DNA of 50,987 nt from Octopus sinensis (lineage: Eukaryota), in the NCBI RefSeq assembly GCF_006345805.1, contig NW_021834348.1, forward strand, positions 1 through 50,987, written 5' to 3'. Within the stretch, counting starts at the first letter, position 1. Each line of letters opens with the position of its first letter. Below are positions 1 to 50,200 of this stretch, one piece after another. Below the pieces are notes generated by a model. The model was not told the origin of the DNA. It saw nothing but the letters and a program-made list of their open reading frames with translations, and did no database searches. The translations under genes and the position numbers were made by a program.

Positions 1-74
1 ATATTCAGACATATTGGCTTTAAATTATGGTAATGGGCAGGCCTTTCTGAGGGGAGGGGAACTTGGATGCATCA

Positions 75-222
75 ACCTCAGTACATGACTGGTACTTATT
101 TTATTGACTCGGAAAGGATGAAGGTTTAAGTGAACGTCGGCAGAATTTGAGCTCAGAGTGTAAAGACGGACAAAATACCGCTAAGCATTTTGTCTGGCAT
201 GCTAACAGTTCTGCCAGCTCAG
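75..222 (-). mobile_element. tRNA-derived SINE (5' part)
   Basis: Minus strand reads GAGCTGGCAGAACTGTTAGCATGCC...CTGAGCTCAAATTCTGCC (A/B-box-like). Same family at 22520-22670, 29110-29277 and 43410-43548. Confidence 0.7.
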
Positions 223-399
223 CATCTTCCCATGGTCAGACAGATTTTCACACAACACTGGAAACGAAGAAGGATATTCATTACAATAATCATACACTGT
301 CAAGATAAGGAGACATAAACATGCACACACCCACACTCATGCATAGTATTAATAGAATAGAAGACAAGTAAGCTGTAGTTGAAGAGCCTTGCCCTAGGT

Positions 400-817
400 G
401 CCATGCAGTGGGACTGAACCTGAAACTTTGTGTTGAGAAGCAAACTCCTTAGCCATACAGCCATGCAGTGGGACTGAACCTGAAACTTGTGGTGGGAAGC
501 AAACTCCTTAGTCATATAACCATGCAGTGGGACTGAACCTGAAACTTTGTGGTTGGGAAGCAAACTCCTTAGCCATACAGCCATGCAGTGGGACTGAACT
601 GAAACTTTGTGGTTGAGAAGCAAACTCCTTAGCCATACAGCCATGCAGTGGACTGAACTGAAACTTTGTGTTGAGAGGCAAACTCCTTAGCCATACAGCC
701 ATGCAGTGGGACTGACCTGAAACTTTGTGGTTGTAAGCAACCCTTAGCCATAATGCAGTGGGACTGAACCTGAAACTTTGTGGTTGAGAAGCAAACTCCT
801 TAGCCATACAGCCATGC
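400..817 (-). repeat. 7 tandem ~60-bp units of a tRNA-derived SINE head
   Basis: Unit GCCATGCAGTGGGACTGAACCTGAAACTTTGTGGTTGAGAAGCAAACTCCTTAGCCATACA repeated 7 times with small indels. Single copy in paralogous regions (~22272-22340, ~43730-43795). Confidence 0.92.
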
Positions 818-939
818 CTGTACCTATAAGCTAGTAAAAACTGAAAACTAAAAATTGCAGTAGAAGACTTTTTTTCTATTGTTTCTGGTATTTTATTACA
901 AAGTTGTCATATTTTCACTTATTTCTTTTCATCATTTCT

Positions 940-941
940 AG
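940..941 (+). promoter_or_regulatory. 3' splice acceptor of the fucosyltransferase-like exon (also 22140-22141 minus and 43921-43922 plus)
   Basis: Pyrimidine tract TTTTCACTTATTTCTTTTCATCATTTCTAG precedes in-frame ATTCGAGTTCTT. TAG 939-941 is an in-frame stop, and no in-frame ATG precedes the hydrophobic segment. Confidence 0.7.
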
Positions 942-2059
942 ATTCGAGTTCTTGGATTCATTGCTGTGGTCAGCATCTTCTTTCTACTGTTTGCCTGGAA
1001 GCAATATTCTGTGAATAAAGAATATACAGGGACAACATTAAACAAACACAACCAAAAGTTTATAAATAATTCTAAGGAATTTCCAAATAATCAAGTGCAT
1101 CATACAAATAACAAAACTGTAAGCAAAGAGAAACAGGAATTGGTTCAGTTAAACAACAAAACTAAATATATTATTTTTTACTGTGTTAATAATATAGAGT
1201 GTGGCGGTTGGGGAGATAGACAGCATGGAATAGTCTCTGTATATTTAATGGCACAGGCCATGGGTCGTCGTTTTGGTATCATTATTTCAAAACCTTGTAA
1301 TTTTGCAAAATATCTTCAACCAAACAAAATTAACTGGACAATTGACCCAAAAGAGTTGCATGGCCTAAAAAGTCGTCACCTCCGTTTGACTCGAGATAAA
1401 GGGTACATATCTGCTTTACGATCAGTAGACTTAGAAAGACGCCACCCTCAAAATGTCCTCTATGTGACAACAAATCAAATCTATTTTCACACCTTAATAG
1501 AGAATCCTCGCTACAAAAAACAACTTCTTTGGTCATCACAAATGCCATATGGAAATGTATTTGCTAAAATAATGAATTTAATGTTTCGATTCAATGATCA
1601 TTTTCAAGAAGCGATTGACAAATTCTTTGAAGTCAATATCCCCAACCCAAATATGCATTTGGTGTGTGCTCAGATTCGAATTGGACGGAACCCCACAATG
1701 CCACATGATGACTGAAGGATGTCAATGTCAAGTGTTCAATCTCTCTGGAACTTCTTAAGTAAATACAAAAACACCAGCAAGTACAAAATGTTTGTGACAA
1801 CAGACTCAGAAGAGGTACAGAAGATAGCTTTAAAAAAATTTTCTCCTCAAATCGTGGAAATGTGAAAAATAGGTGTGAAGGTTTAAGGAAGGTCATTATG
1901 GACCAACATATTCTGACTAAATGTGATACGTTGATAATAAGCCGAAGTAATTTTGGTGAAAATGCTATGATGATGAGCCAAAAAGACAACAAAGTGTATT
2001 ATTTTAAAGAAGGAAATATAACAAGGATCGACAAAAAAAGATTTTTTCGTAACAGGTAA
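942..2059 (+). pseudogene. Fucosyltransferase-like (GT-B, alpha1,2/alpha1,6/O-FucT superfamily) exon, copy A, disrupted
   Basis: Signal anchor IRVLGFIAVVSIFFLLFAW, motif GGWGDRQHGIVSVYLMA, motif I VCAQIRIG, motif II FVTTDSE, motif III ILTKCDTLIISRSNFG. In-frame TGA at 1713-1715; 42-nt deletion plus 2-nt insertion near 1855 versus copy C. Confidence 0.8.
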
Positions 2060-2329
2060 AATACTTGGTTGTGAGACAGGATTTTTTTGACACCCAGAAT
2101 CTGAAAGTGACATCCATGTATCATCATCATGTCAAGATCTTAAGATACTGGATGCATAGAATTTCATTGGTCTTTCAATAAAACAGCTTATGAGGAATAA
2201 GGTATAACATACAAACATACATAGCAATTGATTTTCCTTCAAAACCAGAATGTTTTCTTGAAATTCTACTGAAGAACTATTAAAAATCTTCAAATTTCTA
2301 TAGGCAAATTATATCATTTACATATGCCC

Positions 2330-2408
2330 ACGGGCATATAGTGTAGGGGTTTTGAGCATGAGCTATTAACCCCAAGATTCCAAGTTCAATTCTAGGCAGT
2401 GACCTGAG
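2330..2408 (+). mobile_element. tRNA-like SINE head with (AAT)n tail
   Basis: A-box-like TAGTGTAGGGG and B-box-like AAGTTCAATTC, followed directly by the (AAT)n array. Marks the end of copy A homology (~2318). Confidence 0.55.
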
Positions 2409-2431
2409 TAATAATAATAATAATAATAATG

Positions 2432-2462
<31 letters not shown>

Positions 2463-2534
2463 ATAATAATGATAATAATAATAATAATAATGATACTAAT
2501 AATAATAATAATGATAATAATAATAATGATGATG

Positions 2535-2573
<39 letters not shown>

Positions 2574-2583
2574 TAATAATAAT
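2409..2583. repeat. (AAT)n/(GAT) microsatellite
   Basis: Direct reading. Confidence 0.97.
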
Positions 2584-3435
2584 AACCATTGCTGGGATTT
2601 TTCTTTGTCTATTTCTTTTGCTAAACTAAACGCAAAAGAAATAGACAAAGAAAAATCCCAGCAATGGTTGAGAAGCTCAGGACAGAGGGATTTTTAATTG
2701 CAGCACAAGACCAAAGCCTCCCCACCAGAAATTACCAAAAACATGTAATGAAAAGAAATATAACAAGTAACTGCAGAATATGTGGAGACGGATAAGAAAC
2801 AATAAATCATATTATCTCTGGCTGCCCAGTCCTGGCTAAGTAGGAATATATTCACAGACATGACAGAGTTGGAACCTACATACACTGGAAGCCATGCCAA
2901 CATTATGGAATAACAACAGAAAAAAGATGGTATAGGCACACACCAGAAAAGGTCACAGAAAATGAGAAAGCAACCATACTCTGGGATATGCCGATACACA
3001 CAGATAGAGAAATTAAGGCCAACAGACCAGATATAGTTGTCAGAGATCATGAAGAAAAAAAATGCTTTCTAATTGATGTATCAATACCGGCAGATGACAA
3101 CATGTCTCTAAAAGAAGTGGATAAACTTTCAAAATACAAAGACCTGGAAATAGAGGTAACCAGAATGTGGAATCTAAAAACAGAAACAATTCCTAATATA
3201 GTAGGTGCATTAGGCATGATAAAAAAATATTCAGACAAATACATAACAAAAACACCAGGACTTACAAACACATATAACATACAGAAAATTGCACTACTAG
3301 GCACTGCACACATCCTACGCAGAACACTTTCCATACAATAACCATCAGAGCATCACAACAAATCACAGCACATACCAAAGGCACACAGAGCTGCGCTCGG
3401 TAGTGAAGTGAAAGCACGCTATAAAAATAAAACTA

Positions 3436-3438
<3 letters not shown>
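2584..3438 (+). mobile_element. 5'-truncated R4/Dong-like (restriction-like endonuclease) non-LTR retrotransposon, copy 1
   Basis: Translates FLIAAQDQSLPTRNY, CCHC knuckle CRICGDG*ETINHIISGC, RHDRV, and RLE RPDIVV...LIDVSIP...KLSKYKDL. Two in-frame stops; 3' UTR with AATAAA; flanked by (TAA)n. Confidence 0.85.
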
Positions 3439-3526
<88 letters not shown>

Positions 3527-3602
3527 TAATAATAATAATATTATTATTATTATAATAATAATAATAATTATTATTATTATAATAATAATAATGATGATGA
3601 TG

Positions 3603-3654
<52 letters not shown>
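3439..3654. repeat. (AAT)n array with internal (TTA) flips
   Basis: Direct reading. Confidence 0.97.
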
Positions 3655-4690
<1,036 letters not shown>

Positions 4691-4956
4691 ATTCTTTTTA
4701 TTGGCCACAAGGGCTGATACACATGATTAGAAAACATAAAGGGACAAAACAGGACGAAAGGTTACAAAGGGCTTTGTCCGTTTGTGAAAAAATCGCGTAA
4801 AAACAGTGTAATAATCAAATAATATAACAACGAAAAACTCCCAATAGGGGGAGGCGTTATGAAAGGTTCCTGGTGGAAAAACCCATAAAAGCCAACGGGA
4901 GCCCGGTCAAAAGTGGGGTAGAGAGCCCCTTTCTCCTTTTATAACACCTTTTCCAA

Positions 4957-7900
4957 TTACAGGCGAAACCTGAGAATTGGTCCATTCATACTGGCTATTC
5001 TTGCACAATTCACCCACCTTTCAGAAAACTTGCTATCAGACAGCACCCTCCTCTCATCTTCCTTTTCAAGTGAAACTTGAAAAAGTTGATGAGGCCTTGA
5101 CCAAAGAGGAAAGTGTCTGACCTTAGCCCTTTCAAACGGGTCCACCATACAACCTCCTTCGCCACAGCCACCAGGCACAGGAAAACGGCCTTGCCCTCCT
5201 TGTTAAAGGAGGTCGGCGGGCAATCCTCACTATGGATTCAGCTGATAGCCGGATCCGTCCCACACGTGACAGTAGCTGTTCGACACAAACCCACAGTTCA
5301 GCAATACTTGGGCACTGGACGAGTGCGTGCAGAACGGTTTCGTCGTCCTGGCAACACCTCGGGCATGCCCGGCTGACGGTACTTCCGTGCCGGTAGAGTT
5401 CATCCCGAACAGGCAGAGCCCCTCGGCAGCACTGCCAGGCGAGCGACGTCTGGAAATCATCCATTGGCCCCAGCCTGAAAGTCCTTCCGAACAGACCGCT
5501 CAGTTCGTTATCATCAACGCCTAGAGTTTCCCCGAGAACGTCGTCGCATTTTCCCTCCACTATACCCTCTATAGAAAGCTAGAGTGGAACAAAAACCGAT
5601 CGCATTGCCCGCTTGGCGGAGGGTGGAGAGAGCTTGACGGCACTCGAGGTGCCAAGCGCCCTTTCTCGGTCTACGTTTGATCCAGGTCTGCAGCTCTGTC
5701 AAAGAGACGAGCTGCGGAAAGTCGCGTCTGACAAAAGACGACCACACCTGTTCACCGTCGAGGAAACGCTTGAGATGTCGCAGCCTGAGCGCCTGTCTGC
5801 GCATCAGTAACCACGGCATGCCAAGGCCTCCGTTCAGCGGTCGTTGACAGCAGATTGATCGCCTGACCAGTGGCACCTGACCCTTCCACAAAAAGTCGAA
5901 GAGCAGGCGTACCAGCTTAGCCAACCAGCGGTCGGGACAAGGGATGACGGTCAAGCGGTAATAGATGACGGATGCGATGTACGCATTCGTCACCTCCGCT
6001 CGACCTTTCAAGGACAGCTTCCTCTCGGCCCATTTCTGGGTGAGACGTGCCATCCTGCTCGTCACTTCTTCCCAGTTTTTATCCACCTGGAGGTCTGGAC
6101 CGAACCAGACCCCGAGCAGTTTAACGGGTCCGTCTGTCCAGCGCCCTACGACGCTGTTGGACGGCATGGGCTTGCCTCTCCAGGTGCCCAGTTGCAAGCC
6201 TACAGACTTTTCTGCGTTAATCTTTACCCCTGTCACCGCTTCGTACTCGATTAGTGTCTCGCCAATCAGGTCAATGTGCCTGTGGATCGACACCATCACG
6301 GTGACGTCGTCGGCATAGGCAGACATGCTGTTTCCACCTCCTAGATCACGCGGGATACCCCTCAAATCCTCCAACTTGTGCAGTAATGGCTCAAGAGTCA
6401 ATATGTACAAGAGGGAGGAGAGAGGGCATCCTTGGCGGACCGAACACGAGATGTCAAACGGTTCCGAAAGGTGACCATTCACCCGTATCACCGAGCAGAT
6501 GTTGCTGTATAAAGCAGCGATCCACCCGCGGAAGACTGGACCGAAGCCGGCTGCCTTGAGAACAGCTGCCAGGTACCGATGGTCGACCCTATCGAAGGCT
6601 TTACTCTGATCTAAATTGATCAAAGCCCCACCCGCGCCAGCGTCGTTACCCACCCTCTCTAAGATGTAGTGCATGAGATGGAGGTTGTCGTGTATCGACC
6701 TGGTCAGCACGGCGCATGTCTGCGTTTTGCCAACCAGCTTGTCCACGACAAGCGCCAATCTCTTGGCTAGCACCTTGGCCAAAATCTTCAACTCTGCGTT
6801 GAGCAGAGTGATGGGCCGAAAATTCCCTATAATGCCCCCTTGTTTGGGTCCTTTCTCAGCAAAGCCACTACCCCTTGACAGACAAAAGCAGAAATTCTCC
6901 CGTTTTGCTGCCAATTGCAGTAGACGTTTGCCAACAGGCCCGCAAACAAGTCTGGCATTGAAGTGTAAAGCTCGTATGGCAGACCATCCAAACCCGGCGA
7001 TCTACCTCTCATGCAACTCTTCATTGCTTCTTCCACTTCCCAGGCAGATATCGGTCCTTCGCAGCACTCTGCTTCGCTGTCCGAGAGTTGCGGTAGGCCG
7101 TCCAGGTACACACCAATATCTATACCGTTGTGCGTTCCACCGCTCCTTCCAAACAGTTGAGCAAAGTGCCGCTGAAACACCACACACATCTGCTTCGGTT
7201 CGGTAACCTCGTGCCCGTTCTGCTCCACCAAAGACCGAATGTTTGCTATGTTGCCTTGCTTCACCTCCGCCACGCGGGCCCGTCGAGCGGCTCTAGTCCC
7301 CTCCTCGCTTAGCGAAAGTGCCTTAGCTCTGACAACGCAGCCTTCGTGCTTGGTGTCAAAGTGTTGGTCAAGGGCCAACCTTGCTGCCAACACGTCGGTC
7401 GCGATGCCAGTCTCAAGAGCCTCGTCTAGTTTCTTAGCTAAATCCCGCTCTCTCTTCCTACGTTCAATAGCTAGAGCCTTAATAAACCTAATCGACTCTA
7501 CTCTAATTGCTCTCTTGAGTGCAAACCACCAGTTGTTGTTGATGATTGCCCCTGTGAGCACCCGCTTAACTAGTAAACTAATCCGGTCTCTGTAAGCTTT
7601 GCATGCCGTTAACGACGCGTTCAGCTTCCAGTAGCCGGGTCCCTGTCTATGTAGCCTATCTAAGTCGACCGTACAGATCACGAATTTGTGGTCCGTGTAG
7701 TCGACTAGGTGGAATTGTGGACACCCTTTGCTGTCCTTATCCGCTGGCCTACAAAACACTTTATCTAAGTTTATCTAGACGACCCGATGCGATTGGTCCA
7801 AGTCCACAATGGCACATTCGGGTTGTCTAGTCGAAACCTGTCGAACAGCTGAAAGCGTCCGAGTAGGTTGGCGAGGTTCTTGCACCCCCCTCTCCTATCA

Positions 7901-8375: not shown

Positions 8376-8409
8376 GTTTCAAAGGTGACAAAAAATAAAA
8401 GGAGAAAAA

Positions 8410-9172: not shown

Positions 9173-9237
<65 letters not shown>

Positions 9238-18358: not shown

Positions 18359-20189
18359 AGTTTTGGTTTGCGGAACACTACCAGTACGTTCCAGCGTTTC
18401 ATTGAGGAAGTCGTCTGCGGATTTGATTTTGTGTTCGCTTATGTTGGTGACATACTCATTGCAAGCGACACACGTGACAATCATCTCCGCTACTTGTCTC
18501 AGCTTTTTCAGCCTCTTCGCGCCTATGGTGTGCGTATTAATCCTGTCAAGTGTATTTTCGGGAAATCTTCTCTTGAATTTCTGGGACATCATATTGACTC
18601 GAGTGGCATCAAACCTCTCTCTTCCAAAGTCGATGCCATTCAAAGAATCGCACCCCCGACACTTCACTACTCCCAACTTCGTAATTTTGGGGCATTGTCA
18701 ATTTTTACAGACACTTCGTTAGAAATTGTGCAGACAAGTTACTTCCCCTGACTCTGCTATTGAAAGCAGATAACAAAAAGAGTAGCAGTTGTACTTGAGG
18801 TCTTTTCTCTTCGCCTGCCAGAAGCCTGAACTACATAAAGAACAAAAGAATGATGGAAGGAGACGGTAATATTTAATAATGAACCATGTAATTCACAATC
18901 TGGAAATTTGTTTCCCTAAAACGTTGGGAGTGGGTAAAATTTCCGAGGCTTCCACCTCACCCCACCCCATTATTCAGATACCAAAAAGGGTTTTGTAACA
19001 TATTAGGAGGTCAAAGGTATTCATTCAACGAAAAAAACAAATATTCCAAATGATTCCGGGAATGGGGAAGGGGGTTCCCCTCCCTTGCCCTGCCCCCCTT
19101 TTTTCCGAACCAAAATACGAGATTTGCCGCATATTGGGTGAGGGAACATGATTCCACTCAAAAAAATCCAAGTTTTTCTTTTTTCTTAGTGAAAATCATG
19201 CAAGTGTTAATCTAAAAATTTACCCAACGTTTTCTTTTGCGCCATTGCTAGACGGGAGACTTATCTCATGTTAGCAAACTTACGGATTTCACCGACGTGG
19301 AAATTGGTAAAAGTTATGGTCGAAAATCAGTCATATGGATTTGGGTTCAATCCCAGTGAATGGTACCTTGAGCAGTTATTTTCCACTGAATCCCTGGGCA
19401 ATCAATACCTTGTGATGAAGGGAGCAAGACAAACATTTGAAATCATTTAAGAATTTTAATTACACAACCCAGCAGGTATTTTATTGTCAGGAGATTTTTA
19501 CTTGGTTTGAAGGCTTTTGAAATGTTGAATTATCATGCCTAGATTTCAAGATACCAAAACGCCACAAATTTTGCAATTTTCCTCAATTTCAGAAAAATGC
19601 ATCGTCTGTGGAAATTGTGTCAGAAATTTAGAGCCAAGGAAAAACATTGGATAATCAAACAATGACCAGAGCAAACGTTAGTTCCAGGGTCTTTTAATGT
19701 GGCTGAAGAGACGGTAGTGGTTACATATAGACAGTACCAGGTGGTGACGTGGTTGCGTGTACATTATTAGAAATAGAAATAAAATATAAATTCAAGTTCT
19801 ATAAATTTACTGCATAAAAATATTTTTATTACATAACCAAAATTGTAGAATCTAGTTGAATGAAGTAATCTATGCAAGAAAATTCAGAGATAGAAAATAC
19901 AGAAATAACAGCTAAGTGGTGGCTTTCGGTAATGTGGCGTAGAGAAATAGACGGGCATAGGAATGACGTGAATGGCTCTAAGTCTAATCAACTAAGAAGC
20001 AAAGAGCAGGGTTAGCAAGCTGTTTTTATTAATGGAACGCTAAACATTCTAGAAACTTCCAAGAGAAATGCTAAGCTTCTTGAATAATTAAGAATCGTGT
20101 CTCCTGACACAAATGCTTGGAGAAACTTAGAGAGGGGAGGTTACTCTGCAAACTTTCTTGCAAGACAGATCCACTACAAACCGTTAATT

Positions 20190-20700
20190 CAAGGCATTTA
20201 TTTAAAAAATAAATATCTTCTTCCAGTCCATATCAAACTTGGTATTATGAAGCAGATTGTTGGTTTCACCATATTTGCAGCATGTTTCCCAGCCTGAGCA
20301 GCAAAAAGATAAATGCTGGAGTATTTGACGAGCCTCAAATCAGAAAATCTATGAAAGATGAGAACATGAAACATGGAACTTATTTGTAATAGTTGTAAAT
20401 AACTTTCTGGGAAACAAGAAAGCAACCAGTTATGCTGAAATAGTTGACAACATGGCTGGAGAACTTTCAAAACTTGACAGCAAATATAAGCATAAAGCTG
20501 CACAATGCCCACAGCCACCATGATGAATTCCCTAAAGATCTGGGGACACAAGTGACTAGCATGGAGAACATTTCCATCAGGACATAAAATCAATGGAATA
20601 AAGGTATCAAGGCAAATGAGTCTTGTATACGATGGTGGACCCATACTAGAACTTGGTTCGTCATCTTCCTGAGGTTCATCATTCAGGAAAAGTATCCAAA
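20190..20700 (+). mobile_element. DNA transposase remnant, probably CMC/Chapaev-like
   Basis: PVHIKLGIMKQIV, KINAGIFDEPQIRK, FLGNKK, SIKLHNAHSHHDEFPKDLG (H-x4-H), HGEHFHQDIK...RYQG. The superfamily label is from memory of motifs. Confidence 0.6.
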
Positions 20701-20967
20701 CAGATATTCATGGGAAATTAGGCATAAAACAATGATATAAGTTGCCTATAGAAATTTGAAGATTTTTAATAGTTCTTCAGTAGAATTTCAAGAAAACATT
20801 CTGGTTTTGAAGGAATCCATTGCTATGTATGTTTGTATGTTATACCTTATTCCTCATAAGCTGTTTTATTGAAAGACCAATGAAATTCTATGCATCCAGT
20901 ATCTTAAGATCTTGACATGATGATGATACATGGATGTCACTTTCAGATTCTGTGTGCCAAAAAAATT

Positions 20968-22139
20968 TTATTTCACAACCATTTTTTTTTGCCAGATGGC
21001 AGAAAATTTTTCTTTGTTGATTTGTTTTTTTTTGTATATCTAAAATAAAACACTTTGTTGTCTTTTTGGCTCATCATCATAGCATTTTCACCAAAACACT
21101 TCGGCTTATTATCAACGTATCACATTCACTCAGAATATATTGGTCCAAAAACGCCTTCCTTACACCATCACACTTGTTTTTCATCTCCTTACGTGGCCGA
21201 TCCATATGCATTATTCCCCTGATGTGTACACAATTTGAGGAGAAAATTTTTTAAAAGCTATCGCCTGTACCACTTCTGAGTCTGTTGTCACAAATATTTG
21301 TACTTGCTTGTGTTGTACTTATTTAACAAGTTCCAGATAATCTGAATACTTGACATTGAATTCCTTGGGGGATCTCCTGGAACACTAGGGTTCTGTCCCA
21401 TTCGAATCTGAGCACACACCAGATGTATATCTGGCCTGGGGATATTGACTTCAAAGAATTTGTCAAATTTTTCCTGTAAATGATCGCTGAAGCGAAACAA
21501 TAAATTCATCATTTTAGCAAATAAATTTCCATATGACATTTTTGATGCCCAATGCAGTTGTTCTTTGTAGCGAGGATTCCGTTTCAAGGCATGAAAATAG
21601 ATTCGATTTGTTGTCAGATAGAGGACATCTTCAGGGTAAAGCATTTCTAAGTCTGCTGATTGTAAAGAGGAAATGTACGTATTGTTGTCAACCAAATGAA
21701 GGCGACGACTTCTTAGGCCATGCAACTCTTTTGGGTCAATTGTCCAGTTAATTTTGTTTGGTTGAAGATAATTAGTAAAATTACAAAGTCTTGAAATAAT
21801 GATGCCAAAACGACGACCCATGGCCTGTGCCATTAAATATATAGAAATTATTCCATGCTGTCTATCTCCCCAACCTCCACAACCTCTATGATCAACACAG
21901 TAAAAAATAATATATTTAGTTTTGTTGTTTAACTGAACCAATTCCTGTTTCTCTTTGCTTACAGTTTTCTTATTTATATGATGCACTTGATTATTTGGAA
22001 ATTCCTTAAAATTATTTATAAACTTTTGGTTGTGTTTGTTTAATGTTGTCCCTGTATATTCTTTATTCACAGAATATTGGTTCCAGGCAAACAGTAGAAA
22101 GAAGATGCTGACCACAGCAATGAATCCAAGAACTCGAAT
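20968..22139 (-). pseudogene. Fucosyltransferase-like exon, copy B
   Basis: Open from the acceptor through motif I (ORF 21288-22115). Three 1-nt homopolymer deletions (~21297, ~21217, ~21097) break the C-terminal third. Confidence 0.8.
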
Positions 22140-23391
22140 CTAGAAATGATGAAAAGAAATAAACGTAAGTGAAAATATGACAACTTTGTAATAAAATACC
22201 AGAAACAAATAGAAAAAAAGTCTTCTACTGCAATTTTTAGTTTTTCAGTTTTTACTAGCTTATAGGTACAGGCATGGCTGTATGGCTAAGGAGTTTGCCT
22301 CTCAACCACAAAGTTTCAGGTTCAGTCCCACTGCATGGCACCTAGGGCAAGGCTCTTCAACTACAGCTTACTTGTCTTCTATTCTATTAATACTATGCAA
22401 TGTGTTGGGTGTGTGCATGTTTATGTCTCCTTATCTTGACAGTGTATGATTATTGTAAATGAATATCCTTCTTCGTTTCCAGTGTTGTGTGAAAATCTGT
22501 CTGACCATGGGAAGATGCTGAGCTGGCAGAACTGTTAGCATGCCAGACAAATGCTTAGCGGTATTTTGTCCGTCTTTACACTCTGAGCTCAAATTCTGCC
22601 AACGTTCACTTTAACCATAATCCTTTCCGAGTCAATAAATAAGTACCAGTCATGTACTGAGGTTGATGCATCCAAGTTCCCCCTCCCCTCAGAAAGGCCT
22701 GCCATCTCACCATAATTTAAAGCCAATATGTCTGAATATGGAGAAATACTAAACTGAAACAGATAAGGGTTGGTGACAGGATGGGCACCCAGTCGTAGAA
22801 AATCTGCCATGGTAAATTTGCTCACCCCATGCAAACATGGAAAAATGATTGTTAAAATTAGACTACCGTCAGACAAAGAATACTTACGACCCATTAATGC
22901 CAGCATTTTAATTCAAATCATTCTTGTATGCTAGCTAATTCCCTACTTTCGTTAACCATAATTTGGTCTTACCTTAGTAATAGACAATGTATTAGACCAT
23001 ATCCAGACATTCTACTACCTAGATCAATTGCAGTTGGATATTCCCTACATTGTTAACCATAATTTGTTTTCACCTTAGTGATAGATAATCAACAAGACCC
23101 TAGTCAAACATTTTGACATTTGTGAAAATACATATATGCTGTAGGGAATACGACCATACGTATGGAGCTGGTGACAAATGTCTCCTTTAAAATGCAGCAC
23201 ACGGTCGCCCCTAACAAAATATGAAAGCCAAATACAGAGCCAAAGGAATAAATGAAGGACAACAACCGTTCTACTGTTTGAGAGAGAAAAAGACTTTATT
23301 TACAATGTGTACAAAGAGAGTGTGTGTGTGAGTGCTAGCAAGGTGTAGTGTCTGAATGCATGCGCATAGTATTTGTGACTGAGTGTTCGTA

Positions 23392-25382: not shown

Positions 25383-26265
25383 TATAATGTATATATATGT
25401 TTGTGTGTGTTTGTCCCCCCACCATTGCTTGACAACTGATGTCGGTTTGTTTACATCCCCATAACGTAGCAGTTCAGCAAACAGAAACTGATAAATAAGT
25501 ACTAAGTTTTAAAAAAATATATCCTGGGGTCGATTTATTTGACTAAAGGCAGTGCTCCAGCATGGCCGCAGTCAAATGACTGAAACAAATAAAAGAATGT
25601 GTGTGTGTGTCTTGCATGTGGAAAAATCAACAATATATTTACTTACTGAGTAAAAACTATTTCCTTGGCAATTCTTCATTATGAAAGTTTCTTACTTAAT
25701 AACTCGCTGTATTGCGTCTCTTTCCTTCCAAACTACAGTGAAATGGGTTAACAGACAGCTTCTTTTGTTATCTTAAATGTATAGTTGACTGGTAACTTTT
25801 AATCTGAAACACTTGGGCGGATTGCTTTTAACTGTTTGCTTTCTTTTGCTTTAGTATGTATGGGCTTTTTGTGTGTTTGTGTGTTGCCACTGTATAATAG
25901 AAAAGGCGGTACATGGAGGTGTCACACCCAGTGACTGGTGTAATGTCATCATAGTCAACTGCTACAAAAGTACAGGCGACACCTTAAATAGAAAAAATAT
26001 GGAAGTATCAAATTGTTGGATCAGGTGATGAAAGTCACAGAGAGGGTCAAAGCCCAACTTATCAGGGAGAGAGTTATTCTAGATGAGATGCAGTTTGGTT
26101 TTGTGCCAGGGAGAAGCACCAACGATGCTATATTCCTGGTAAAGCAACTGCAGGAGAAATACATAGCCAAAGATAAACCTCTGTACTTGGCTTTTGTTGC
26201 CTTGGGGAAGACTTTTGACAGGATCCCCCGATCCCTTATCTGGTGGTCAATGTGTAAACTAGGAA
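25383..26265. repeat. Inverted duplicate block (SINE 3' half + unique sequence + RTE RT fragment)
   Basis: Reverse complement of 37770-38603. The latter lacks 51 nt (VPGRSTNDAIFLVKQLQ). Confidence 0.92.
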
Positions 26266-37769: not shown

Positions 37770-38603
37770 ATCACTATTCCACATTGACTACCAGATAAGG
37801 GATCGGGGGATCCAGTCAAAGGTTTTCTCCAAGGCAACAAAAGCCAAGTACAGAGGTTTATATTTGGCTATGTATTTTTCAAAACCAAACTGCATCTCAT
37901 CTAGAATAACTCTCTCCCTGATAAGTTGGGCTTTGACTCTCTCTGTGACTTTCATCACCTGATCCAACAATTTGATACTTCCATATTTTTTCTATTTAAG
38001 GTGTCGCCTGTACTTTTGTAGCAGTTGACTATGATGACATTACACCAGTCATTGGGTGCGACACCTCCATGTACCGCCTTTTCTATTATACAGTGGCAAC
38101 ACACAAACACACACAAAGCCCATACATACTAAAGCAAAAGAAAGCAAACAGTTAAAAGCAAATCCACCCAAGTGTTTCAGATTAAAAGTTACCAGTCAAC
38201 TATACATTTAAGATAACAAAAGAAGCTGTCTGTTAACCCATTTCACTGTAGTTTGGAAGGAAAGAGACGCAATACAGCGAGTTATTAAGTAAGAAACTTT
38301 CATAATGAAGAATTGCCCAAGAATTGGATTTCACCCAGTAAGTAAATATATTGTTGATTTTTCCACATGCAAGACACACACACACACATTCTTTTATTTG
38401 TTTCAGTCATTTGACTGCGGCCATGCTGGAGCACTGCCTTTAGTCAAACGAATCGACCCCAAGATATACTTTTTTTTAAACTTAGTACTTATTTATCAGT
38501 TTCTGTTTGCTGAACTGCTACGTTATGGGGATGTAAACAAACCCACATCAGTTGTCAAGCAATGGCGGGGGTACAAACACACACAAACATATATATACAT
38601 TAT
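37770..38603. repeat. Inverted duplicate of 25383-26265
   Basis: Near-identical reverse complement including non-TE-like sequence. Confidence 0.92.
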
Positions 38604-42917: not shown

Positions 42918-43922
42918 AAATGTCGGTTCACAAATATCAAAATGTTTGACTAGGGTCTTGTTGATTATCTATCACTAGGGTGAAAACAAATTATGGTTAA
43001 CAATGTAGGGAATTATCCAACTGCAATTGATCTAGGTAGTAGAATGTCTGGATATGGTCTAATACATTGTCTATTACTAAGGTAAGACCAAATTATGGTT
43101 AACCAAAGTAGGGAATTAGCTAGCATACAAGAACGATTTGAATTAAAATGCTGGCATTAATGGGTCGTAAGTATTCTTATAAACAACAGAATGTCTGATG
43201 GTAGTCTAATTTTAACAATCATTTTTCCATGTTTGCATGGGGTGAGCAAATTTACCATGGCAGATTTTCTACGACTGGGTGCCCATCCTGTCACCAACCC
43301 TTATCTGTTTCAGTTTAGTATTTCTCCATATTCAGACATATTGGTTTTAAATTATGGTAGAGGGCAGGCCTTTCTGAGGGGAGGGGGAACTTTGATGCAT
43401 CAACCCCAGTACATGACTGGTACTTATTTTATTGACTCGGAAAGGATTATGGTTAAAGTGAACGTCGGCAGAATTTGAGCTCAGAGTGTAAAGACGGACA
43501 AAATACCGCTAAGCATTTTGTCTGGCATGCTAACAGTTCTGCCAGCTCAGCATCTTCCCATGGTCAGACAGATTTTCACACAACACTGGAAACGAAGAAG
43601 GATATTCATTTACAATAATCATACACTGTCAAGATAAGGAGACATAAACATGCACACACCCACACTCATGCATAGTATTAATAGAATAGAAGACAAGTAA
43701 GCTGTAGTTGAAGAGCCTTGCCCTAGGTGCCATGCAGTGGGACTGAACCTGAAACTTTGTGGTTGAGAGGCAAACTCCTTAGCCATACAGCCATGCCTGT
43801 ACCTATAAGCTAGTAAAAACTGAAAAACTAAAAATTGCAGTAGAAGACTTTTTTTCTATTTGTTTATGGTATTTTATTACAAAGTTGTCATATTTTCACT
43901 TATTTCTTTTTATCATTTCTAG

Positions 43923-45090
43923 ATTCGAGTTCTTGGATTCATTGCTGTGGTCAGCATCTTCTTTCTACTGTTTGCCTGGAAGCAATATTCTGTGAATAAA
44001 GAATATACAGGGACAACATTAAACAAACAAACCAAAAGTTTATAAATAATTCTAAGGAATTTCCAAATAATCAAGTGCATCATATAAATAAGAAAACTGT
44101 AAGCAAAAAGAAACAGGAATTGGTTCAGTTAAACAACAAAACTAAATATATATTTTTTACTGTGTTGATCATAGAGGTTGTGGAGGTTGGGGAGATAGAC
44201 AGCATGGAATAATTTCTATATATTTAATGGCACAGGCCATGGGTCGTCGTTTTGGCATCATTATTTCAAGACTTTGTAATTTTACTAATTATCTTCAACC
44301 AAACAAAATTAACTGGACAATTGACCCAAAAGAGTTGCATGGCCTAAGAAGTCGTCACCTTCATTTGGTTGACAACAATACGTACATTTCCTCTTTACAA
44401 TCAGCAGACTTAGAAATGCTTTACCCTGAAGATGTCCTCTATCTGACAACAAATCGAATCTATTTTCATGCCTTGAAACGGAATCCTCGCTACAAAGAAC
44501 AACTGCATTGGGCATCAAAAATGTCATATGGAAATTTATTTGCTAAAATGATGAATTTATTGTTTCGCTTCAGCGATCATTTACAGGAAAAATTTGACAA
44601 ATTCTTTGAAGTCAATATCCCCAGGCCAGATATACATCTGGTGTGTGCTCAGATTCGAATGGGACAGAACCCTAGTGTTCCAAGAGATTGCCCAAGGAAT
44701 TCAATGTCAAGTATTCAGATTATCTGGAACTTGTTAAATAAGTACAAAATATTTGTGACAACAGACTCAGAAGTGGTACAGGCGATAGCTTTTAAAAAAT
44801 TTTCTCCTCAAATTGTGTACACATCAGGGGGAATAATGCATATGGATCGGCCACGTAAGGAGATGAAAAACAAGTGTGATGGTGTAAGGAAGTCGCTTAT
44901 GGACCAATATATTCTGAGTGAATGTGATACGTTGATAATAAGCCGAAGTGGTTTTGGTGAAAATGCTATGATGATGAGACAAAGAGAAAACAACCTGTTT
45001 TATTTTAAACATGGAGAAATACAGCAAATCAACAAAGAAAAAGTTTCTACCTGGTGGCCAAAAAAATGGTGTGGGGGAATTATATCTTGA
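43923..45090 (+). pseudogene. Fucosyltransferase-like exon, copy C (C-terminal 287 aa open)
   Basis: Two 1-nt deletions (~44029, ~44150) in the stem region. ORF 44227-45090 holds VCAQIRMG, FVTTDSE, IMHMD and DQYILSECDTLIISRSGFG. AATAAA at ~45177. Confidence 0.8.
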
Positions 45091-45339
45091 CAAACAGAAT
45101 CTGAAAGTGACATCCATGTATCATCATCATGTCAAGATCTTAAGATACTGGATGCATAGAATTTCATTGGTCTTTCAATAAAACAGCTTATGAGGAATAA
45201 GGTATAACATACATAGCAATGGATTTTCCTTCAAAACCAGAATTTTTTCTTGAAATTCTACTGAAGAACTATTAAAATCTTCAAATTTCTATAGGCAACT
45301 TATATCATTGTTTTATGCCTAATTTCCCATGAATATCTG

Positions 45340-45900
45340 TTTGGATACTTTTCCTGAATGATGAACCTCAGGAAGATGACGAACCAAGTTCTAGTATGGG
45401 TCCACCATCGTATACAAGACTCATTTGCCTTGATACCTTTATTCCATTGATTTTATGTCCTGATGGAAATGTTCTCCATGCTAGTCACTTATGTCACCAA
45501 GATCTTTAGGGAATTCATCATGGTGGCTGTGGGCATTGTGCAGCTTTATGCTTATATTTGCTGTCAAGTTTTGAAAGTTCTCCAGCCATGTTGTCAACTA
45601 TTTCAGCATAACTGGTTGCTTTCTTCTTTCCCAGAAAGTTATTTACAACTATTACAAATAAGTTTCATGTTTCATGTTCTCATCTTTCATAGATTTTCTG
45701 ATTTGAGGCTCGTCAAATATTCCAGCATTTATCTTTTTGCTGCTCAGACTGGGAAACATGCTGCAAATATAGTGAAAAAATGGTTTGTCTTTATCCAGAA
45801 CTTCAACAATCTGCTTCATAATACCAACTTTGATATGGACTGGATGAAGATATTTATTTTTTAAATAAATGCCTTGAATTAACGGTTTGTAGTGGTAGCT
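45340..45900 (-). mobile_element. Chapaev-like transposase remnant (arm-2 copy)
   Basis: HPVHIKVGIMKQIVEVLDKDKPFFHYICSMFPSLSSKKINAGIFD. Confidence 0.6.
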
Positions 45901-47217
45901 AGATAGTTGAATGATCTGTCTTGCAAGAAAGTTTGCAGAGTAACCTCCCCTCTCTAAGTTTCTCCAAGCATTTGTGTCAGGAGACACGATTCTTAATTAT
46001 TCAAGAGGCTTAGCATTTCTCTTGGAAGTTTCTAGAATGTTTAGCGTTCCATTAATAAAAACAACTTGCTAACCCTGCTCCTTGCTTCTTAGTTGATTAG
46101 ACTTAGAGCCATTCACATTATTCCTATGCCCGTCTATTTCTCTACGCCACATGACCGAAAGCCACCACTTAGCTGTTATTTCTGTATTTTCTATCTCTGA
46201 ATTTTCTTGCATAGATTACTTCATTCAACTAGATTCTACAATTTTGGTTATGTAATAAAAATATTTTTATGCAGTAAATTTATAGAACTTGAATTTATAT
46301 TTTATTTCTATTTCTAATAATGTACACGCAACCACGTCACCACCTGGTACTGTCTATATATAACCACTACCAACTCTTCAGCCACATTAAAAGACCCTGG
46401 AACTAACATTTTCTCTGGTCATTGTTTGATTATCCAATGTTTTTCCTTGGCTCTAAATTTCTGACACAATTTCCACAGACGATGCATTTTTCTGAAAATT
46501 GAGGAAAATTGCAAAATTTGTGGCGTTTTGGTATCTTGAAATCTAGGCATGATAATTCAACATTTCAAAAGCCTTCAAACCAAGTAAAAATCTCCTGACA
46601 ATAAAATACCTGCTGGGTTGTGTAATTAAAATTGTTAAATGATTTCAAATGTTTGTCTTGCTCACCTTCATCACAAGGTATTGATTGCCCCAGGGATTCA
46701 GTGGAAAATAACTGCTCAAGGTACCATTCACTGGGATTGAACCCAAATCCATATGACTGATTTTCAACCATAACTTTTACCAATTTCCACGTTGGTGAAA
46801 TCCGTAAGTTTGCTAACATGAGATAAGTCTCCCGTCTAGCAATGGCGCAAAAGAAAACGTTGGGTAAATTTTTAGATTAACACTTGCATGATTTTCACTA
46901 AGAAAAAGAAAAACTTGGATTTTTTTGAGTGGAATCATGTTCCCTCACCCAATATGCGGCAAATCTCGTATTTTGGTTCGGAAAAAAGGGGGGCAGGGCA
47001 AGGGAGGGGAACCCCCTTCCCCATTCCCGGAATCATTTGGAATATTTGTTTTTTTCGTTGAATGAATACCTTTGACCTCCTAATATGTTACAAAACCCTT
47101 TTTGGTATCTGAATAATGGGGTGGGGTGAGGTGGAAGCCTCGGAAATTTTACCCACTCCCAACGTTTTAGGGAAACAAATTTCCAGATTGTGAATTACAT
47201 GGTTCATTATTAAATAT

Positions 47218-50200
47218 TACCGTCCCCTTCCATCATTCTTTTTGTTCTTTATGTAGTTCAGGCTTCTGGCATGCAAAGAGAAAAGACCTCAAGTACAACT
47301 GCTATTTACAACTGGATTATTTAGAGGAAAGGTGAAGTGTGCTACTCTCAGCAACCACCTTAAGCTCCGATTGTATGGGCTTATAGCCACTGGAGATAGA
47401 CAGGCAGAAAGCCTCAGCCAGTGTTGGTGTTCAGACAATGCTGCTGCGTAATGGCGCCAAAAGAGAAAAGACAGGACTGAATCGGTTTTCCGTCTACATC
47501 ACTTCCATCATGAGCCTCGTTGTGTTCTCGCACATGGCAAAATGGATGCAGGTGAGGTCTCGCTCCAGTCTCAGAGATGGCAATGGCTGCTGTGAGATCT
47601 CATCCAATATGGTGCTGGCTGTTGGTCCTGCTACAAAGGGCTCCCCACTGAGTGCGGAAGTACGGAAACAGAATAATTGGAGCAGGCACAAGAAAGAGCA
47701 AAGATGACAACTGATCGCAACCAAGATATGGCACAAATATGTCACAAGTCAAATAGAAAAATAACTGCAAGAAATTTAAATTGGCATGCACAAAATTTGA
47801 CAAAATGTTCAATGGCAGAGTATTGGAACTGCCCAGTAACACAAGAAAGTGATTGTCTGTCACAGAAAACACAAAAGAGATTGTCAGATATAAATAGTTT
47901 TAGTGAGTTTTTAGGCCAATGCAGAGTGCAGCCAGTCCTGGTGACAAAGGGTTTGTTCATGTTAGGCAGTGGCGACGAAGGTATGGGTGATGGTGTGGTC
48001 AAAGGTGCATGTGCAGGTGGATGTGTAGGTGGTTGTAAAGGATCAAAGGTGGGCTTGTTTGGGGTGTCATCGAAGGGTGTGGACACCTCAAGATATGCAC
48101 TTTTAAGTCTGTCGACCGACACAGTCTCTGTTCGACCATTGATGTTGAGACTAAAAGTTTTGGGTGCATGTGATAGCACACGAAATGGTCCCTTATAAGG
48201 AGAAACGAGAAGTCCTCTGACAGAATCATCCCGAACAAAAACATCAGTCCATTTGTCAATATCCGGAGGGACGTGAGAGGGAATAGACTAGTCACGCGGC
48301 TGCATGGGTGGAAGACTTGAGAAATACAAGCGAAGTCTAGTGACATACAATGTTGGATCGGGGGACGATGAGTTGTCTGGCACTAACATTGTACCAGGGA
48401 GTGCCAGGGTGGTACCGTAAATGAGTTCAGCAGAGGAGAAGCCTAAGTCTGCTTTAACAGCAGCGCGACAATCAAAAAGAATGATAGGCAGGAATTCTGT
48501 CCTAGACTGCGAGTCAGAAGTGACGCATAGAGCAGCTTTCAGTTGCCTGTGAAAACGTTCAACCATCCCACTGGAGGCTGGGTTGTAGCTGGTTGTACGA
48601 ATGTGATGAACTCCTAGGATTCGTGATAATTCACGAAATAGGGAAGCCTCGAACTGGCGTCCGCGATCAGTGGTTATTTAAGCAGGGACTCCAAAGCGAG
48701 CAATCCAGTTAGAAACGAAAGCTCGAGCAACTGACTCAGCGGAAATGAACACTATTGGAATGGCCTCTGGCCAACGAGAGAAATGGTCGACGCATATCAA
48801 TATGTAAGAGAAACTGCGACTGACAGGCCATGGTCCAACCAGATCAATGTGGACATGGCGAAAATGAGCCTCCGGAGGGGAAAACTGTCCGAGAGAAGTG
48901 TGAATATACCTGTGGATTTTAGAACATTGACATTTTACTCAAGGGCGTGCCCAATCAGTGATCATCCGGCGCATCCGCCAGAAAAACCGAATAAGCTTCA
49001 CCGAGGCAGCAACGCCAGGATGTGACAGTGAATGCAAGGCATCAAAAACGGAGCGCTGGTGGTTCTCAGGTACAAACGGCCTGGGAGAACCAGTAGCCGT
49101 GTCAGCAGTCGGAAGTGGCAGATAGGCAAATTTGCAGCAGGACAACATGGTAGAATCTAAATCCAAAGCGTCCAGAGCCGGCTGATCCTGTGCAATGGCA
49201 GTTAAATCGATTGCTGCAGGAGATGAAAGGGAGCACACAGGAAGACAAGAGAATGCGTCAGCAGGCACGTTCTCTGTTGCAGGAATGTGCCGAATGTCAC
49301 TCGTGAACTGGGAAATGTAGGCCAGGTGACGAAAAGCATGAGGCGAGTGGTTGTTCGATTTAGATGGCAGAGCAAACGTAAGACGCTTGTGATCAGTATA
49401 AATCACAAAATCTCGGCCCTCGACTTGATATTGAAAATGATGAACTGACAGGTAGATCGCCAAAAACTCGAGATCAAACGTACTGTACCGACGTTGAGCT
49501 GGCTTTAATTGATGAGAAAAAAACCCCTCCAAAGGTTTAGTCTGATTGTCTACGGTGTGCTGCAAAACAGCATCAACTGCAGAATCCGATGCATCAACGG
49601 TCAAAGAGAGAGGGGCGTTGGGAACTGGATATGCAAGCAAAGGGACAGAAGCTATTTCCTTCTTAATGGACTCAAGAGCAGATAACCCCCTCGTCAGATA
49701 AAGCAATAGGAGGATTCTTTTTGTTATCTACTTTCAATAGCAGAGTCAGGGGAAGTAACTTGTCTGCACAATTTCTAACGAAGTGTCTGTAAAAATTGAC
49801 AATGCCCCAAAATTTACGAAGTTGGAGTAGTGAAGTGTCGGGGGTGCGATGCTTTGAATGGCATCGACTTTGGAAGAGAGAGGTTTGATGCCACTCGAGT
49901 CAATATGATGTCCCAGAAATTCAAGAGAAGATTTCCCGAAAACACACTTGCCAGGATTAATACGCACACCACAGGCACGAAGAGGCTGAAAAAGCTGAGA
50001 CACAAGTAGCAGAGATGATTGTCACGTGTGTCGCTTGCAATGAGTATGTCACCAACATAAGCGAACACAAAATCAAATCCGCGGACGACTTCCTCAATGA
50101 AACGCTGGAACGTACTGGTAGCGTTCCGCAAACCAAAACTCACACTCTCTCTTTTACTCTTTTACTTGTTTCAGTCATTTGACTGCGGCCATGCTGGAGC

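What the first reader, a model, noticed from the sequence alone, without database searches (positions are those of the whole stretch)
1320..1630. Inverted divergence profile: catalytic domain diverged, stem and non-coding flanks nearly identical
Seen by manual alignment: A vs B differ at only 4 of 74 residues in the TM/stem. A vs C differ at 31 of 86 residues in SRHL...DKFF of the N-terminal catalytic lobe. The upstream intron and ~220-nt 3' flank are close to identical. Established: stems usually evolve fastest in Golgi glycosyltransferases. Inference: diversifying selection on acceptor recognition, or conversion tracts from or between paralogs.
Basis: partly seen in the sequence, partly recalled or inferred. 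Interest (0 to 1): 0.72.

Follow-up and report, generated by a model that had tools for sequence, protein, structure and literature searches.

The report
Gene-conversion mosaic in octopus fucosyltransferase-like pseudogenes
Three copies of an octopus fucosyltransferase-like gene are almost identical at both ends but about 17% different in the middle, because their ends were copied between paralogs (gene conversion) while the middle kept an old divergence; there is no sign of adaptive change, and all three copies appear to be broken.

Summary
The profile is far from uniform. A vs B differ by 0/92 nt in the intron end, 4/244 in the TM/stem, 151/904 in 1186-2095 and 2/221 in 2096-2318 (two-breakpoint chi-square 131; highest of 200 permutations 23.6).

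The cause is patchy gene conversion between old paralogs, not diversifying selection. In the flagged tract dS rises with dN (A-C: dS 0.30, dN 0.21, ratio 0.67). In the stem, synonymous differences are 0 over 45.5 synonymous sites. Both catalytic lobes diverge equally (27% and 31%).

The O. sinensis ortholog of A carries the same mosaic. In O. bimaculoides a head-to-head pair is identical in intron and stem (2/321 nt) and diverges from almost the same position. Intron plus stem group by species (bootstrap 100). The central block groups by paralog type across species (96).

All three window copies carry disabling lesions: A has a TGA and a 40-nt deletion; B and C have several 1-nt indels.

The protein is a type II membrane protein with a GT-B fold related to FUT8 and NodZ. 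It reaches no Pfam threshold.

This is an ordinary, well-known kind of concerted evolution in a TE-rich paralog cluster.

The parts
1..941 (+). Copy A: 3' part of intron 1 (cut by the window start). It is near-identical to the introns of B and C. It contains a 59-60-nt minisatellite at 400-817.
   Evidence: A has 9 mismatches in 466 nt to B and 9 to C. A-B differ by 0/92 in 850-941. The acceptor AG is at 940-941, and the frame opens at 942. TRF finds 7.1 copies at 400-817. B, C and O. sinensis have a single copy.
942..1185 (+). Copy A: 5' block of exon 2, encoding the TM helix and stem. It is homogenised with B and C.
   Evidence: A-B 4/244 nt and A-C 3/242 nt. Synonymous differences are 0. 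The AF2 model shows a TM helix from residue 11 and a disordered stem to residue 82.
1186..2095 (+). Copy A: old, unconverted central block. It covers the whole globular GT-B domain (A-type), the native stop at 2057-2059 and 36 nt of 3' UTR.
   Evidence: A-B 151/904, A-C 164/891 and A-sD 148/907, but A-sA (the O. sinensis ortholog) only 16/909. NJ groups A, sA and O. bimaculoides bY with bootstrap 96.
1366..1632 (+).
   Evidence: 31/86 residues differ from C. dS is 0.304, dN 0.205, ratio 0.67.
1713..1715 (+). Premature TGA in copy A (CGA in the O. sinensis ortholog). It removes the GDP-fucose-binding C lobe.
1853..1854 (+). Junction of a 40-nt frameshifting deletion in copy A. The 40 nt are present in O. 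sinensis sA, B, C, sD, bX and bY.
2096..2318 (+). Copy A: 3' homogenised block, made of the distal 3' UTR (AATAAA at 2177-2182) and the downstream flank. Homology ends at 2318, where a repeat insertion starts.
   Evidence: A-B 2/221, A-C 3/214 and A-sD 6/223. The alignment breaks after 2318.
20731..22739 (-). Copy B (B-type). Intron end 22739-22140; exon 2 from 22139 to the homologous stop at about 20974; 3' block 20951-20731. It has 1-nt indels at about 21299, 21219, 21097, 21028 and 20990.
25647..25679 (-). Exon 1 of copy B (MKNCQGNSFYS, followed by a GTAAGT donor).
38305..38337 (+). Exon 1 of copy C (MKNCPRIGFHP, followed by a GTAAGT donor). It is homologous to exon 1 of O. sinensis P0001.
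43328..45309 (+). Copy C (B-type). Intron end 43328-43922; exon 2 from 43923. It has 1-nt deletions at about 44030, 44151 and 45070, and a 15-nt deletion at about 44746. The internal ORF 44227-45090 is all that remains open.
44977..45095 (+). A patch in C that is 25% diverged from B and resembles the O. bimaculoides bX C-terminus. Over A coordinates 1925-2023, B and sD are instead A-like. This points to additional small conversion tracts.
   Evidence: B-C 29/118 here against 7/809 in the rest of the central block. Best breakpoints for B-C are 1976..2098, chi-square 244. See also the alignment.
18783..23126 (-). Arm 1 of the 4.4-kb B/C inverted duplication.
   Evidence: It matches 42927-47304 at 95.8%.
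42927..47304 (+). Arm 2 of the B/C inverted duplication.

Best explanation
The window is octopus DNA about 1.8% diverged from O. sinensis chromosome CM016881.1, probably from the O. vulgaris/sinensis complex. It carries three copies of a two-exon gene for a type II membrane protein with a GT-B fold related to FUT8 and NodZ.

Two catalytic types exist. Copy A is the A-type; B, C and the O. sinensis gene P0001 are the B-type. The types separated about as long ago as, or before, the split between O. bimaculoides and the O. vulgaris group.

Since then, ectopic gene conversion between the nearby copies has repeatedly overwritten two blocks: the end of the intron plus the TM/stem part of exon 2, and, in the vulgaris/sinensis lineage, a 223-nt 3' UTR/flank block. 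The roughly 900-nt block encoding the globular domain was left unconverted. The flanks therefore coalesce at 0-2% divergence and the middle at about 17-20%.

The 'inverted' profile is thus a difference in age between blocks, not a difference in selection.

Shown directly: the block structure, the elevated dS, the conflicting trees, the same pattern in two other genomes, and the disabling lesions.

Inferred: the mechanism. Conversion probably spreads from the shared 5' side of inverted or nearby repeats. It probably stops where mismatch density becomes too high, or where selection once kept the two catalytic types apart.
For: 1. Block structure with sharp edges. A-B differ by 0/92, 4/244, 151/904 and 2/221 nt in the four successive blocks. 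The permutation test is far beyond chance.

2. Neutral sites follow the blocks. The intron and 3' flank are near-identical. Synonymous differences are 0 over 45.5 synonymous sites in the stem and 13 over 52 in the tract (dS 0.30 against dN 0.21).

3. Two breakpoints require conversion (or a double exchange), not a single unequal crossover.

4. The O. sinensis ortholog sA (L001) has the same mosaic. It is A-type in the centre (16/909 from A) and shares its flanks with the B-type copies.

5. The O. bimaculoides head-to-head pair bX/bY (L003) differs by 1/95 in the intron and 1/226 in the stem, but by 123/947 in the centre. Its first cluster of differences is at A coordinates 1192-1198. In the window, the first A-B cluster is at 1188-1199.

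6. Trees conflict between blocks. Intron plus stem: {bX,bY} bootstrap 100. Central 1186-1975: {A,sA,bY} 96. Informative sites in 1366-1720: 17 support the type split, 6 the species split and 4 the third split. In intron plus stem: 12 support the species split and 0 the type split.

7. There are further small patches of exchange (C 44977-45095; B/sD A-like over 1925-2023).

8. Divergence increases with distance from the 5' side in both species, as expected for conversion tracts of variable length.
Against: - The age of that sub-tract relative to the speciation is therefore uncertain.
- No outgroup was used, so rates along the A and B lineages are not polarised.
- The direction of exchange cannot be fully determined. 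The flanks may have been homogenised, or the centre may have been imported into A.
- No conversion event was observed directly, and no population data were available.
- The single-base indels in B and C could in principle be assembly errors. In that case the 'pseudogene' label would hold only for A.
Confidence: 0.8

Rival explanations
1. Diversifying (positive) selection on the acceptor-binding N lobe drove the catalytic domain apart, while the rest of a young duplicate stayed identical.
For: Many replacement differences: 31/86 residues. dN/dS is fairly high throughout the family (0.4-0.9). One non-significant value above 1 was found for bX-bY in 1633-1975 (1.26).
Against: dS in the tract is 0.30, above dN at 0.21. 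Stem dS is 0. Lineage-specific N:S is 12:5 and 14:5 against a neutral ratio of about 4:1. The C lobe is as diverged as the N lobe (30.9% against 27.3%). The central block groups by type across species. A is a pseudogene here, and sA also carries frameshifts.
Confidence: 0.04
2. The exchange ran in the opposite direction, or the copies have a chimeric origin. A would be a B-type locus whose central block was overwritten from a divergent A-type donor. Alternatively, B and C would be hybrids made by unequal crossing-over between an A-type locus (5' side) and a D-type locus (3' side).
For: The upstream sequence of B and C (to 23611) matches the O. sinensis A locus at 95.4%. The intron of the intact B-type gene sD is unrelated from about 17 nt upstream of exon 2. 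The centre and downstream flank of B and C match sD.
Against: No second A-type gene turned up in O. sinensis (one search found only P0007, which is sA). A versus sD also shows two breakpoints, with stem 11/244 and 3' block 6/223 against centre 148/907; a single crossover cannot produce that. The O. bimaculoides pair shows the same 5' homogenisation with both types intact.
Confidence: 0.13
3. Functional constraint, not conversion, keeps the intron end, the stem and the 3' block identical (for example through regulatory or targeting elements).
For: The 3' block differs less between species (A-bY 12/223) than the intron does (10/91). It contains the polyadenylation signal.
Against: The same intron and stem differ by 7-11% between species, yet by 0-2% between paralogs within a species. 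That is the signature of concerted evolution, not of constraint. Stems are unalignable across the wider family.
Confidence: 0.02
4. An assembly artefact: collapsed or chimeric assembly of repeats.
For: The region is rich in transposable elements and repeats.
Against: The same mosaic is present in an independent assembly of a different species (O. sinensis GCA_006345805.1). An analogous mosaic is present in O. bimaculoides GCA_001194135.2.
Confidence: 0.01

Closest known systems
Partial gene conversion with concerted evolution of duplicated genes (textbook case recalled from my own knowledge: the human fetal globin genes HBG1/HBG2, homogenised on the 5' side with a sharp boundary)
   Same: Paralogs are near-identical, including intron and synonymous sites, on one side of a sharp boundary and diverged beyond it. 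Paralogs within a species are closer to each other than orthologs are between species in the converted block.
   Different: Here both a 5' and a 3' block are homogenised around an unconverted centre. No simple-sequence element is evident at the 5' boundary. The copies lie in inverted orientation 18-20 kb apart and are largely pseudogenes.
Arm-to-arm conversion in inverted repeats or palindromes (own knowledge: primate Y-chromosome palindromes)
   Same: B/C (95.8% over 4.4 kb) and O. bimaculoides bX/bY (a 1.95-kb inverted repeat with a 2.2-kb spacer) are head-to-head arms. Their inner parts are almost identical.
   Different: In bX/bY, homogenisation covers only the inner roughly 900 nt. The outer part keeps about 13% divergence and two distinct catalytic types.
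GT23 alpha-1,6-fucosyltransferases (FUT8, NodZ) and the wider GT-B fucosyltransferase superfamily (GT11, GT37, GT65, GT68)
   Same: The family profile hits FUT8 (E 6e-11) and NodZ (3e-5) over the GDP-fucose-binding half. The AF2 model (pLDDT 87.7) matches AtFUT1, NodZ, FUT8 and POFUT2. UniProt names the O. bimaculoides member 'GT23 domain-containing protein'.
   Different: The octopus proteins have no Pfam hit. The model shows a TM helix, a disordered stem and one globular GT-B domain, with no additional domain. In motif I only one Arg is kept: QIRxG where FUT8 has HVRRTD. Activity and acceptor are unknown.

Membership tests
Concerted evolution by ectopic gene conversion | In the converted tract, paralogs within a species are more similar than orthologs between species | tested here: met
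   Stem: A-B 4/244 and bX-bY 1/226, against A-bY 15/226 and sD-bX 18/226. Intron: A-B 0/92 and bX-bY 1/95, against A-bY 10/91.
Concerted evolution by ectopic gene conversion | Adjacent segments give significantly conflicting phylogenies | tested here: met
{bX,bY} bootstrap 100 in intron plus stem; {A,sA,bY} 96 in 1186-1975. Site patterns 12:0 against 6:17.
Concerted evolution by ectopic gene conversion | Differences are clustered beyond chance, with at least two breakpoints | tested here: met
   Maximum chi-square 131 (A-B) and 165 (A-C), against permutation maxima of 23.6 and 27.9.
Concerted evolution by ectopic gene conversion | Silent and non-coding sites are homogenised like replacement sites | tested here: met
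   Stem: 0 synonymous differences over 45.5 synonymous sites. Intron 0/92. 3' flank 2/221. Tract dS 0.30.
Concerted evolution by ectopic gene conversion | Direct evidence of exchange (shared polymorphism between paralogs, pedigree or sperm typing) | not testable with these tools
   No population or read data were available.
Positively selected (diversifying) paralog domain | dN/dS above 1 in the tract, with dS not elevated relative to flanking coding sequence | tested here: not met
   A-C tract ratio 0.67 with dS 0.304, against stem dS 0. Lineage N:S 12:5 and 14:5.
GT23-like GT-B fucosyltransferase | GT-B two-lobe fold with a C-terminal Rossmann-type GDP-fucose-binding lobe | tested here: met
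   AF2 model pLDDT 87.7, pTM 0.79. Foldseek probability 1.00 to AtFUT1, NodZ (TM 0.63 on the target) and FUT8. This rests on a predicted, not a solved, structure.
GT23-like GT-B fucosyltransferase | Conserved fucosyltransferase motifs I-III, including the catalytic or GDP-binding Arg of motif I (FUT8 HVRRTD) | tested here: inconclusive
   The profile alignment puts LVCAQIRiG on VIGVHVRRTDK, IFVaTDSeeV on VYLATDDPSL, and LDQxILskCDvLV on ILDIHFLSQADFLV. One Arg (R257) is nearly invariant. The His, the second Arg and the Asp are not kept.
GT23-like GT-B fucosyltransferase | Match to the Pfam FUT8_N_cat or NodZ models at the gathering threshold | tested here: not met
   The window ORFs and P0001 have no Pfam hit. 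Only 10 of 50 relatives give sub-threshold FUT8_N_cat hits (best 4.5e-05).
GT23-like GT-B fucosyltransferase | Demonstrated GDP-fucose transferase activity and linkage | not testable with these tools
   No biochemical data. The literature search found nothing on this octopus family.
Processed or unprocessed pseudogene (copies A, B, C) | Disabling lesions relative to intact relatives | tested here: met
   A: TGA at 1713 plus a 40-nt deletion. B: five 1-nt indels. C: three 1-nt deletions. B-sD N:S 26:4 and B-C 18:1, compatible with neutrality. Caveat: the 1-nt indels were not verified at read level.

The most novel reading that the evidence does not exclude
The conversion boundary sits at the stem/catalytic-domain junction in two independently homogenised octopus lineages: A coordinates about 1188 in the window and about 1192 in O. 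bimaculoides. This could mean that selection, and not only mismatch density, blocks conversion into the globular domain. A shared 'targeting module' (5' intron, TM and stem) would then be kept uniform, while two catalytic types with different specificities are preserved. That would be a modular form of concerted evolution in a lineage-specific glycosyltransferase expansion.
Probability: 0.15. Interest if true: 0.5.

Novelty: new member of a known kind. Interest (0 to 1): 0.22.

Why it matters
The main value is as a caution. A steep 'catalytic domain diverged, flanks identical' profile among clustered paralogs looks like adaptive diversification. Here it is explained by blocks of different age produced by gene conversion, in copies that are no longer functional.

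It also documents a lineage-specific, FUT8/NodZ-related fucosyltransferase-like family in octopus with two catalytic types. Both types are intact in O. bimaculoides. This gives a defined pair of proteins (P0002-type and P0004-type) for anyone wishing to test whether the two types differ in acceptor specificity.

Tried and rejected
- Direct Pfam and PDB sequence searches with the window ORFs gave nothing useful. The family assignment needed a 50-sequence profile and a predicted structure.
- A tRNA scan for the SINE-like insert that ends A's homology found nothing.
- Two literature searches found nothing on this octopus family or on stem-restricted conversion in glycosyltransferases.
I rely on the whole central block and on site patterns instead.
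- I considered whether O. sinensis P0001 (sD) is the ortholog of B or C and rejected it. Its intron is unrelated from about 17 nt upstream of exon 2, it lies about 200 kb from sA, and it differs from B by 3.4%, against 1.8% for A-sA.
- I considered a single unequal crossover and rejected it as the whole explanation, because A differs from B, C and sD across two breakpoints.
I mapped them onto lobes and secondary-structure elements instead: 47/180 in helices and strands, 40/120 in loops.

Full report
**What is at the coordinates**

The window is AT-rich, repeat-laden animal DNA. A self-comparison finds three copies of a roughly 2-kb segment:
- A at 1-2318 (+), cut by the window start
- B at 22739-20731 (-)
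- C at 43328-45309 (+)

B and C are the arms of a 4.4-kb inverted duplication, 42927-47304 against 23126-18783, at 95.8% identity.

Each copy consists of the end of an intron, one large exon and a 3' flank. In A the acceptor AG is at 940-941 and the frame opens at 942. The exon encodes a TM helix, a stem and a globular domain.

A 33-nt first exon with a GTAAGT donor lies at 38305-38337 for C and at 25679-25647 for B. It is homologous to exon 1 of an annotated O. sinensis gene.

**What the gene is**

The window ORFs hit no Pfam family and no PDB sequence. The only close homologs are octopus proteins:
- O. sinensis LOC118767645 (P0001, 400 aa, intact, 88% identical to C)
- O. sinensis LOC118767632 (P0007, 194 aa, about 97% identical to A)
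- O. bimaculoides P0004 (397 aa)
- O. bimaculoides P0002, which UniProt names 'GT23 domain-containing protein'

An exhaustive search finds 819 cluster representatives. Similarity starts at about residue 80-85, after the stem.

A 50-sequence profile hits FUT8 (E 6e-11), NodZ (3e-5) and plant and other fucosyltransferases. The hits fall over the GDP-fucose-binding half.

An AlphaFold model of P0001 has pLDDT 87.7. It shows a TM helix, a disordered stem to residue 82 and a two-lobe domain. That domain matches AtFUT1, NodZ, FUT8 and POFUT2.

The labels 'Golgi-type glycosyltransferase', 'stem' and 'N-terminal lobe' are therefore reasonable. Strict GT23 membership is not established. There is no Pfam-threshold match. 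Motif I keeps only one Arg.

**Check of the observation**

Nucleotide differences between A and B:

| Block (A coordinates) | A-B differences |
|---|---|
| Intron 850-941 | 0/92 |
| Stem 942-1185 | 4/244 |
| Central 1186-2095 | 151/904 |
| 3' block 2096-2318 | 2/221 |

The two-breakpoint maximum chi-square is 131 (A-B) and 165 (A-C). The highest values in 200 permutations were 23.6 and 27.9.

It runs from 1186 to 2095. Divergence rises from 8% in 1186-1365 to 20% in 1366-1720. There is a low patch at 1901-2000 and a very diverged last 95 nt.

At the protein level the N lobe (27.3%) and the C lobe (30.9%) are equally diverged.

**Selection or conversion**

- In 1366-1632, A-C has dS 0.304, dN 0.205 and a ratio of 0.67. 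Over the whole central block the ratio is 0.7-0.9. In the stem, synonymous differences are 0 over about 46 sites.
- Changes assigned by parsimony to the A lineage are N:S 12:5, and to the B lineage 14:5. Neutral expectation is about 4:1.
- The non-coding flanks show the same near-identity as the stem.

The contrast is therefore one of coalescence time, not of selective regime.

**Evidence from other genomes**

O. sinensis:
- Its ortholog of A (sA, L001) differs from A by 16/909 in the centre. It carries the same mosaic relative to the B-type copies, so the mosaic predates that species split and is not an assembly artefact.
- Its intact B-type gene (sD, L002) lies about 200 kb from sA. Its centre and 3' flank match B and C. 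Its intron is unrelated from about 17 nt upstream of the exon.

O. bimaculoides (L003):
- It has a head-to-head pair, bX (B-type, equal to P0002) and bY (A-type, equal to P0004). The pair forms a 1.95-kb inverted repeat with a 2.2-kb spacer.
- bX and bY differ by 1/95 in the intron and 1/226 in the stem, but by 123/947 in the centre.
- Their first cluster of differences is at A coordinates 1192-1198. In the window, the first A-B cluster is at 1188-1199.

Trees:
- Intron plus stem group by species: {bX,bY} bootstrap 100, with 12 informative sites for the species split and 0 for the type split.
- The central block groups by type across species: {A,sA,bY} bootstrap 96.
- Within 1366-1720, 17 sites support the type split, 6 the species split and 4 the third split.

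This is the classical signature of concerted evolution restricted to part of a gene. The 3' block is homogenised only in the vulgaris/sinensis lineage. In O. bimaculoides, bX and bY differ by roughly 10% there (estimated by eye from the alignment), and bX loses homology at about 2210.

Additional small exchange patches exist:
- C 44977-45095 differs from B by 29/118 and resembles bX.
- B and sD are A-like over A coordinates 1925-2023.

**State of the copies**

Relative to the intact sD frame:
- A has a TGA at 1713 (CGA in O. sinensis) and a 40-nt frameshifting deletion at 1853/1854.
- B has five 1-nt indels.
- C has three 1-nt deletions and a 15-nt deletion.
- The O. sinensis sA has two different 1-nt deletions.

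B-sD (N:S 26:4) and B-C (18:1) look neutral. A's lesions cannot plausibly be sequencing errors. The 1-nt indels in B and C were not verified at read level.

A keeps the family-consensus residue at nearly all of the near-invariant columns that remain readable in it. This includes three columns where the intact sD deviates. A's inactivation therefore looks recent.

**Mechanism and its limits**

Shown:
- blocks of very different age with sharp edges
- homogenisation of silent and non-coding sites
- independent recurrence in two lineages

Inferred:
- Ectopic conversion acts between nearby, partly inverted copies. It is more intense between A, B and C, which lie 18-40 kb apart, than with sD about 200 kb away. 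In the stem, A-B is 4/244 and A-sD is 11/244.
- Tracts start on the shared 5' side. They end where mismatch density rises, or where selection once kept the two catalytic types apart.

The direction of exchange and the exact duplication history are not resolved. In particular, B and C combine an A-locus-like upstream region with a D-like centre and downstream flank.

**Verdict**

The conversion alternative is supported and the selection alternative is not. The phenomenon is a well-known kind, here in a previously undescribed octopus FUT8/NodZ-like family, and mostly in pseudogenes. Interest is low to moderate. The one point worth following is the coincidence of the conversion boundary with the stem/domain junction in two lineages.

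Noticed in passing
window 400-817: A 59-60-nt minisatellite is expanded to 7.1 copies in A's intron. B, C and the O. sinensis ortholog each have a single copy. The unit also matches dispersed repeats at about 17894-17985 and 50496-50857.
   Followed up: partly
window 44977-45095 (C); A coordinates 1925-2023 in B and L002: The last roughly 120 nt of C's coding region differ from B by 25% and resemble the O. bimaculoides B-type C-terminus. B and O. sinensis P0001 carry an A-like patch just upstream. These look like extra small conversion tracts.
   Followed up: partly
window 2319-4700: A's homology to all other copies ends at 2318, at a repeat insertion. It is followed by (TAA)n arrays (2409-2585, 3439-3656, 4509-4688). 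There is also a tandemly duplicated element that begins with an 86-nt hairpin (2584-2669, 3655-3739) and carries identical 117-aa ORFs (2988-3341, 4058-4411) with no Pfam hit.
   Followed up: partly
window 5132-9256, 13901-15699, 31384-32826, 48939-49706: Retrotransposon remains. Non-LTR elements have APE endonuclease and RT ORFs (7827-8375 and 5514-6914 on the minus strand; 31384-32244), with a poly-Q ORF at 8684-9256. RT fragments with a PHD finger lie at 13901-15699. An LTR-type RT-RNaseH lies at 48939-49706.
   Followed up: partly
window 25647-25679 (-) vs 38305-38337 (+): The 33-nt coding part of exon 1 differs at about 8 positions between B (MKNCQGNSFYS) and C (MKNCPRIGFHP). The surrounding promoter and intron sequence is nearly identical.
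   Followed up: no
L002 (O. sinensis P0001), residues 120, 129, 282: The intact O. sinensis B-type protein has H, L and L at three columns that are R, P and F in at least 90% of 50 family members. Pseudogene A keeps the consensus residues at these columns.
   Followed up: no
L003 6001-6144 and window 22589-22906 (-): The annotated first exon of O. bimaculoides P0004 (…LPVTNHYLFQ) corresponds to an ORF (…HPVTNPYLFQ) about 900 nt upstream of exon 2, inside what is intron in the O. sinensis gene model. It may be an alternative first exon or an annotation artefact.
   Followed up: no
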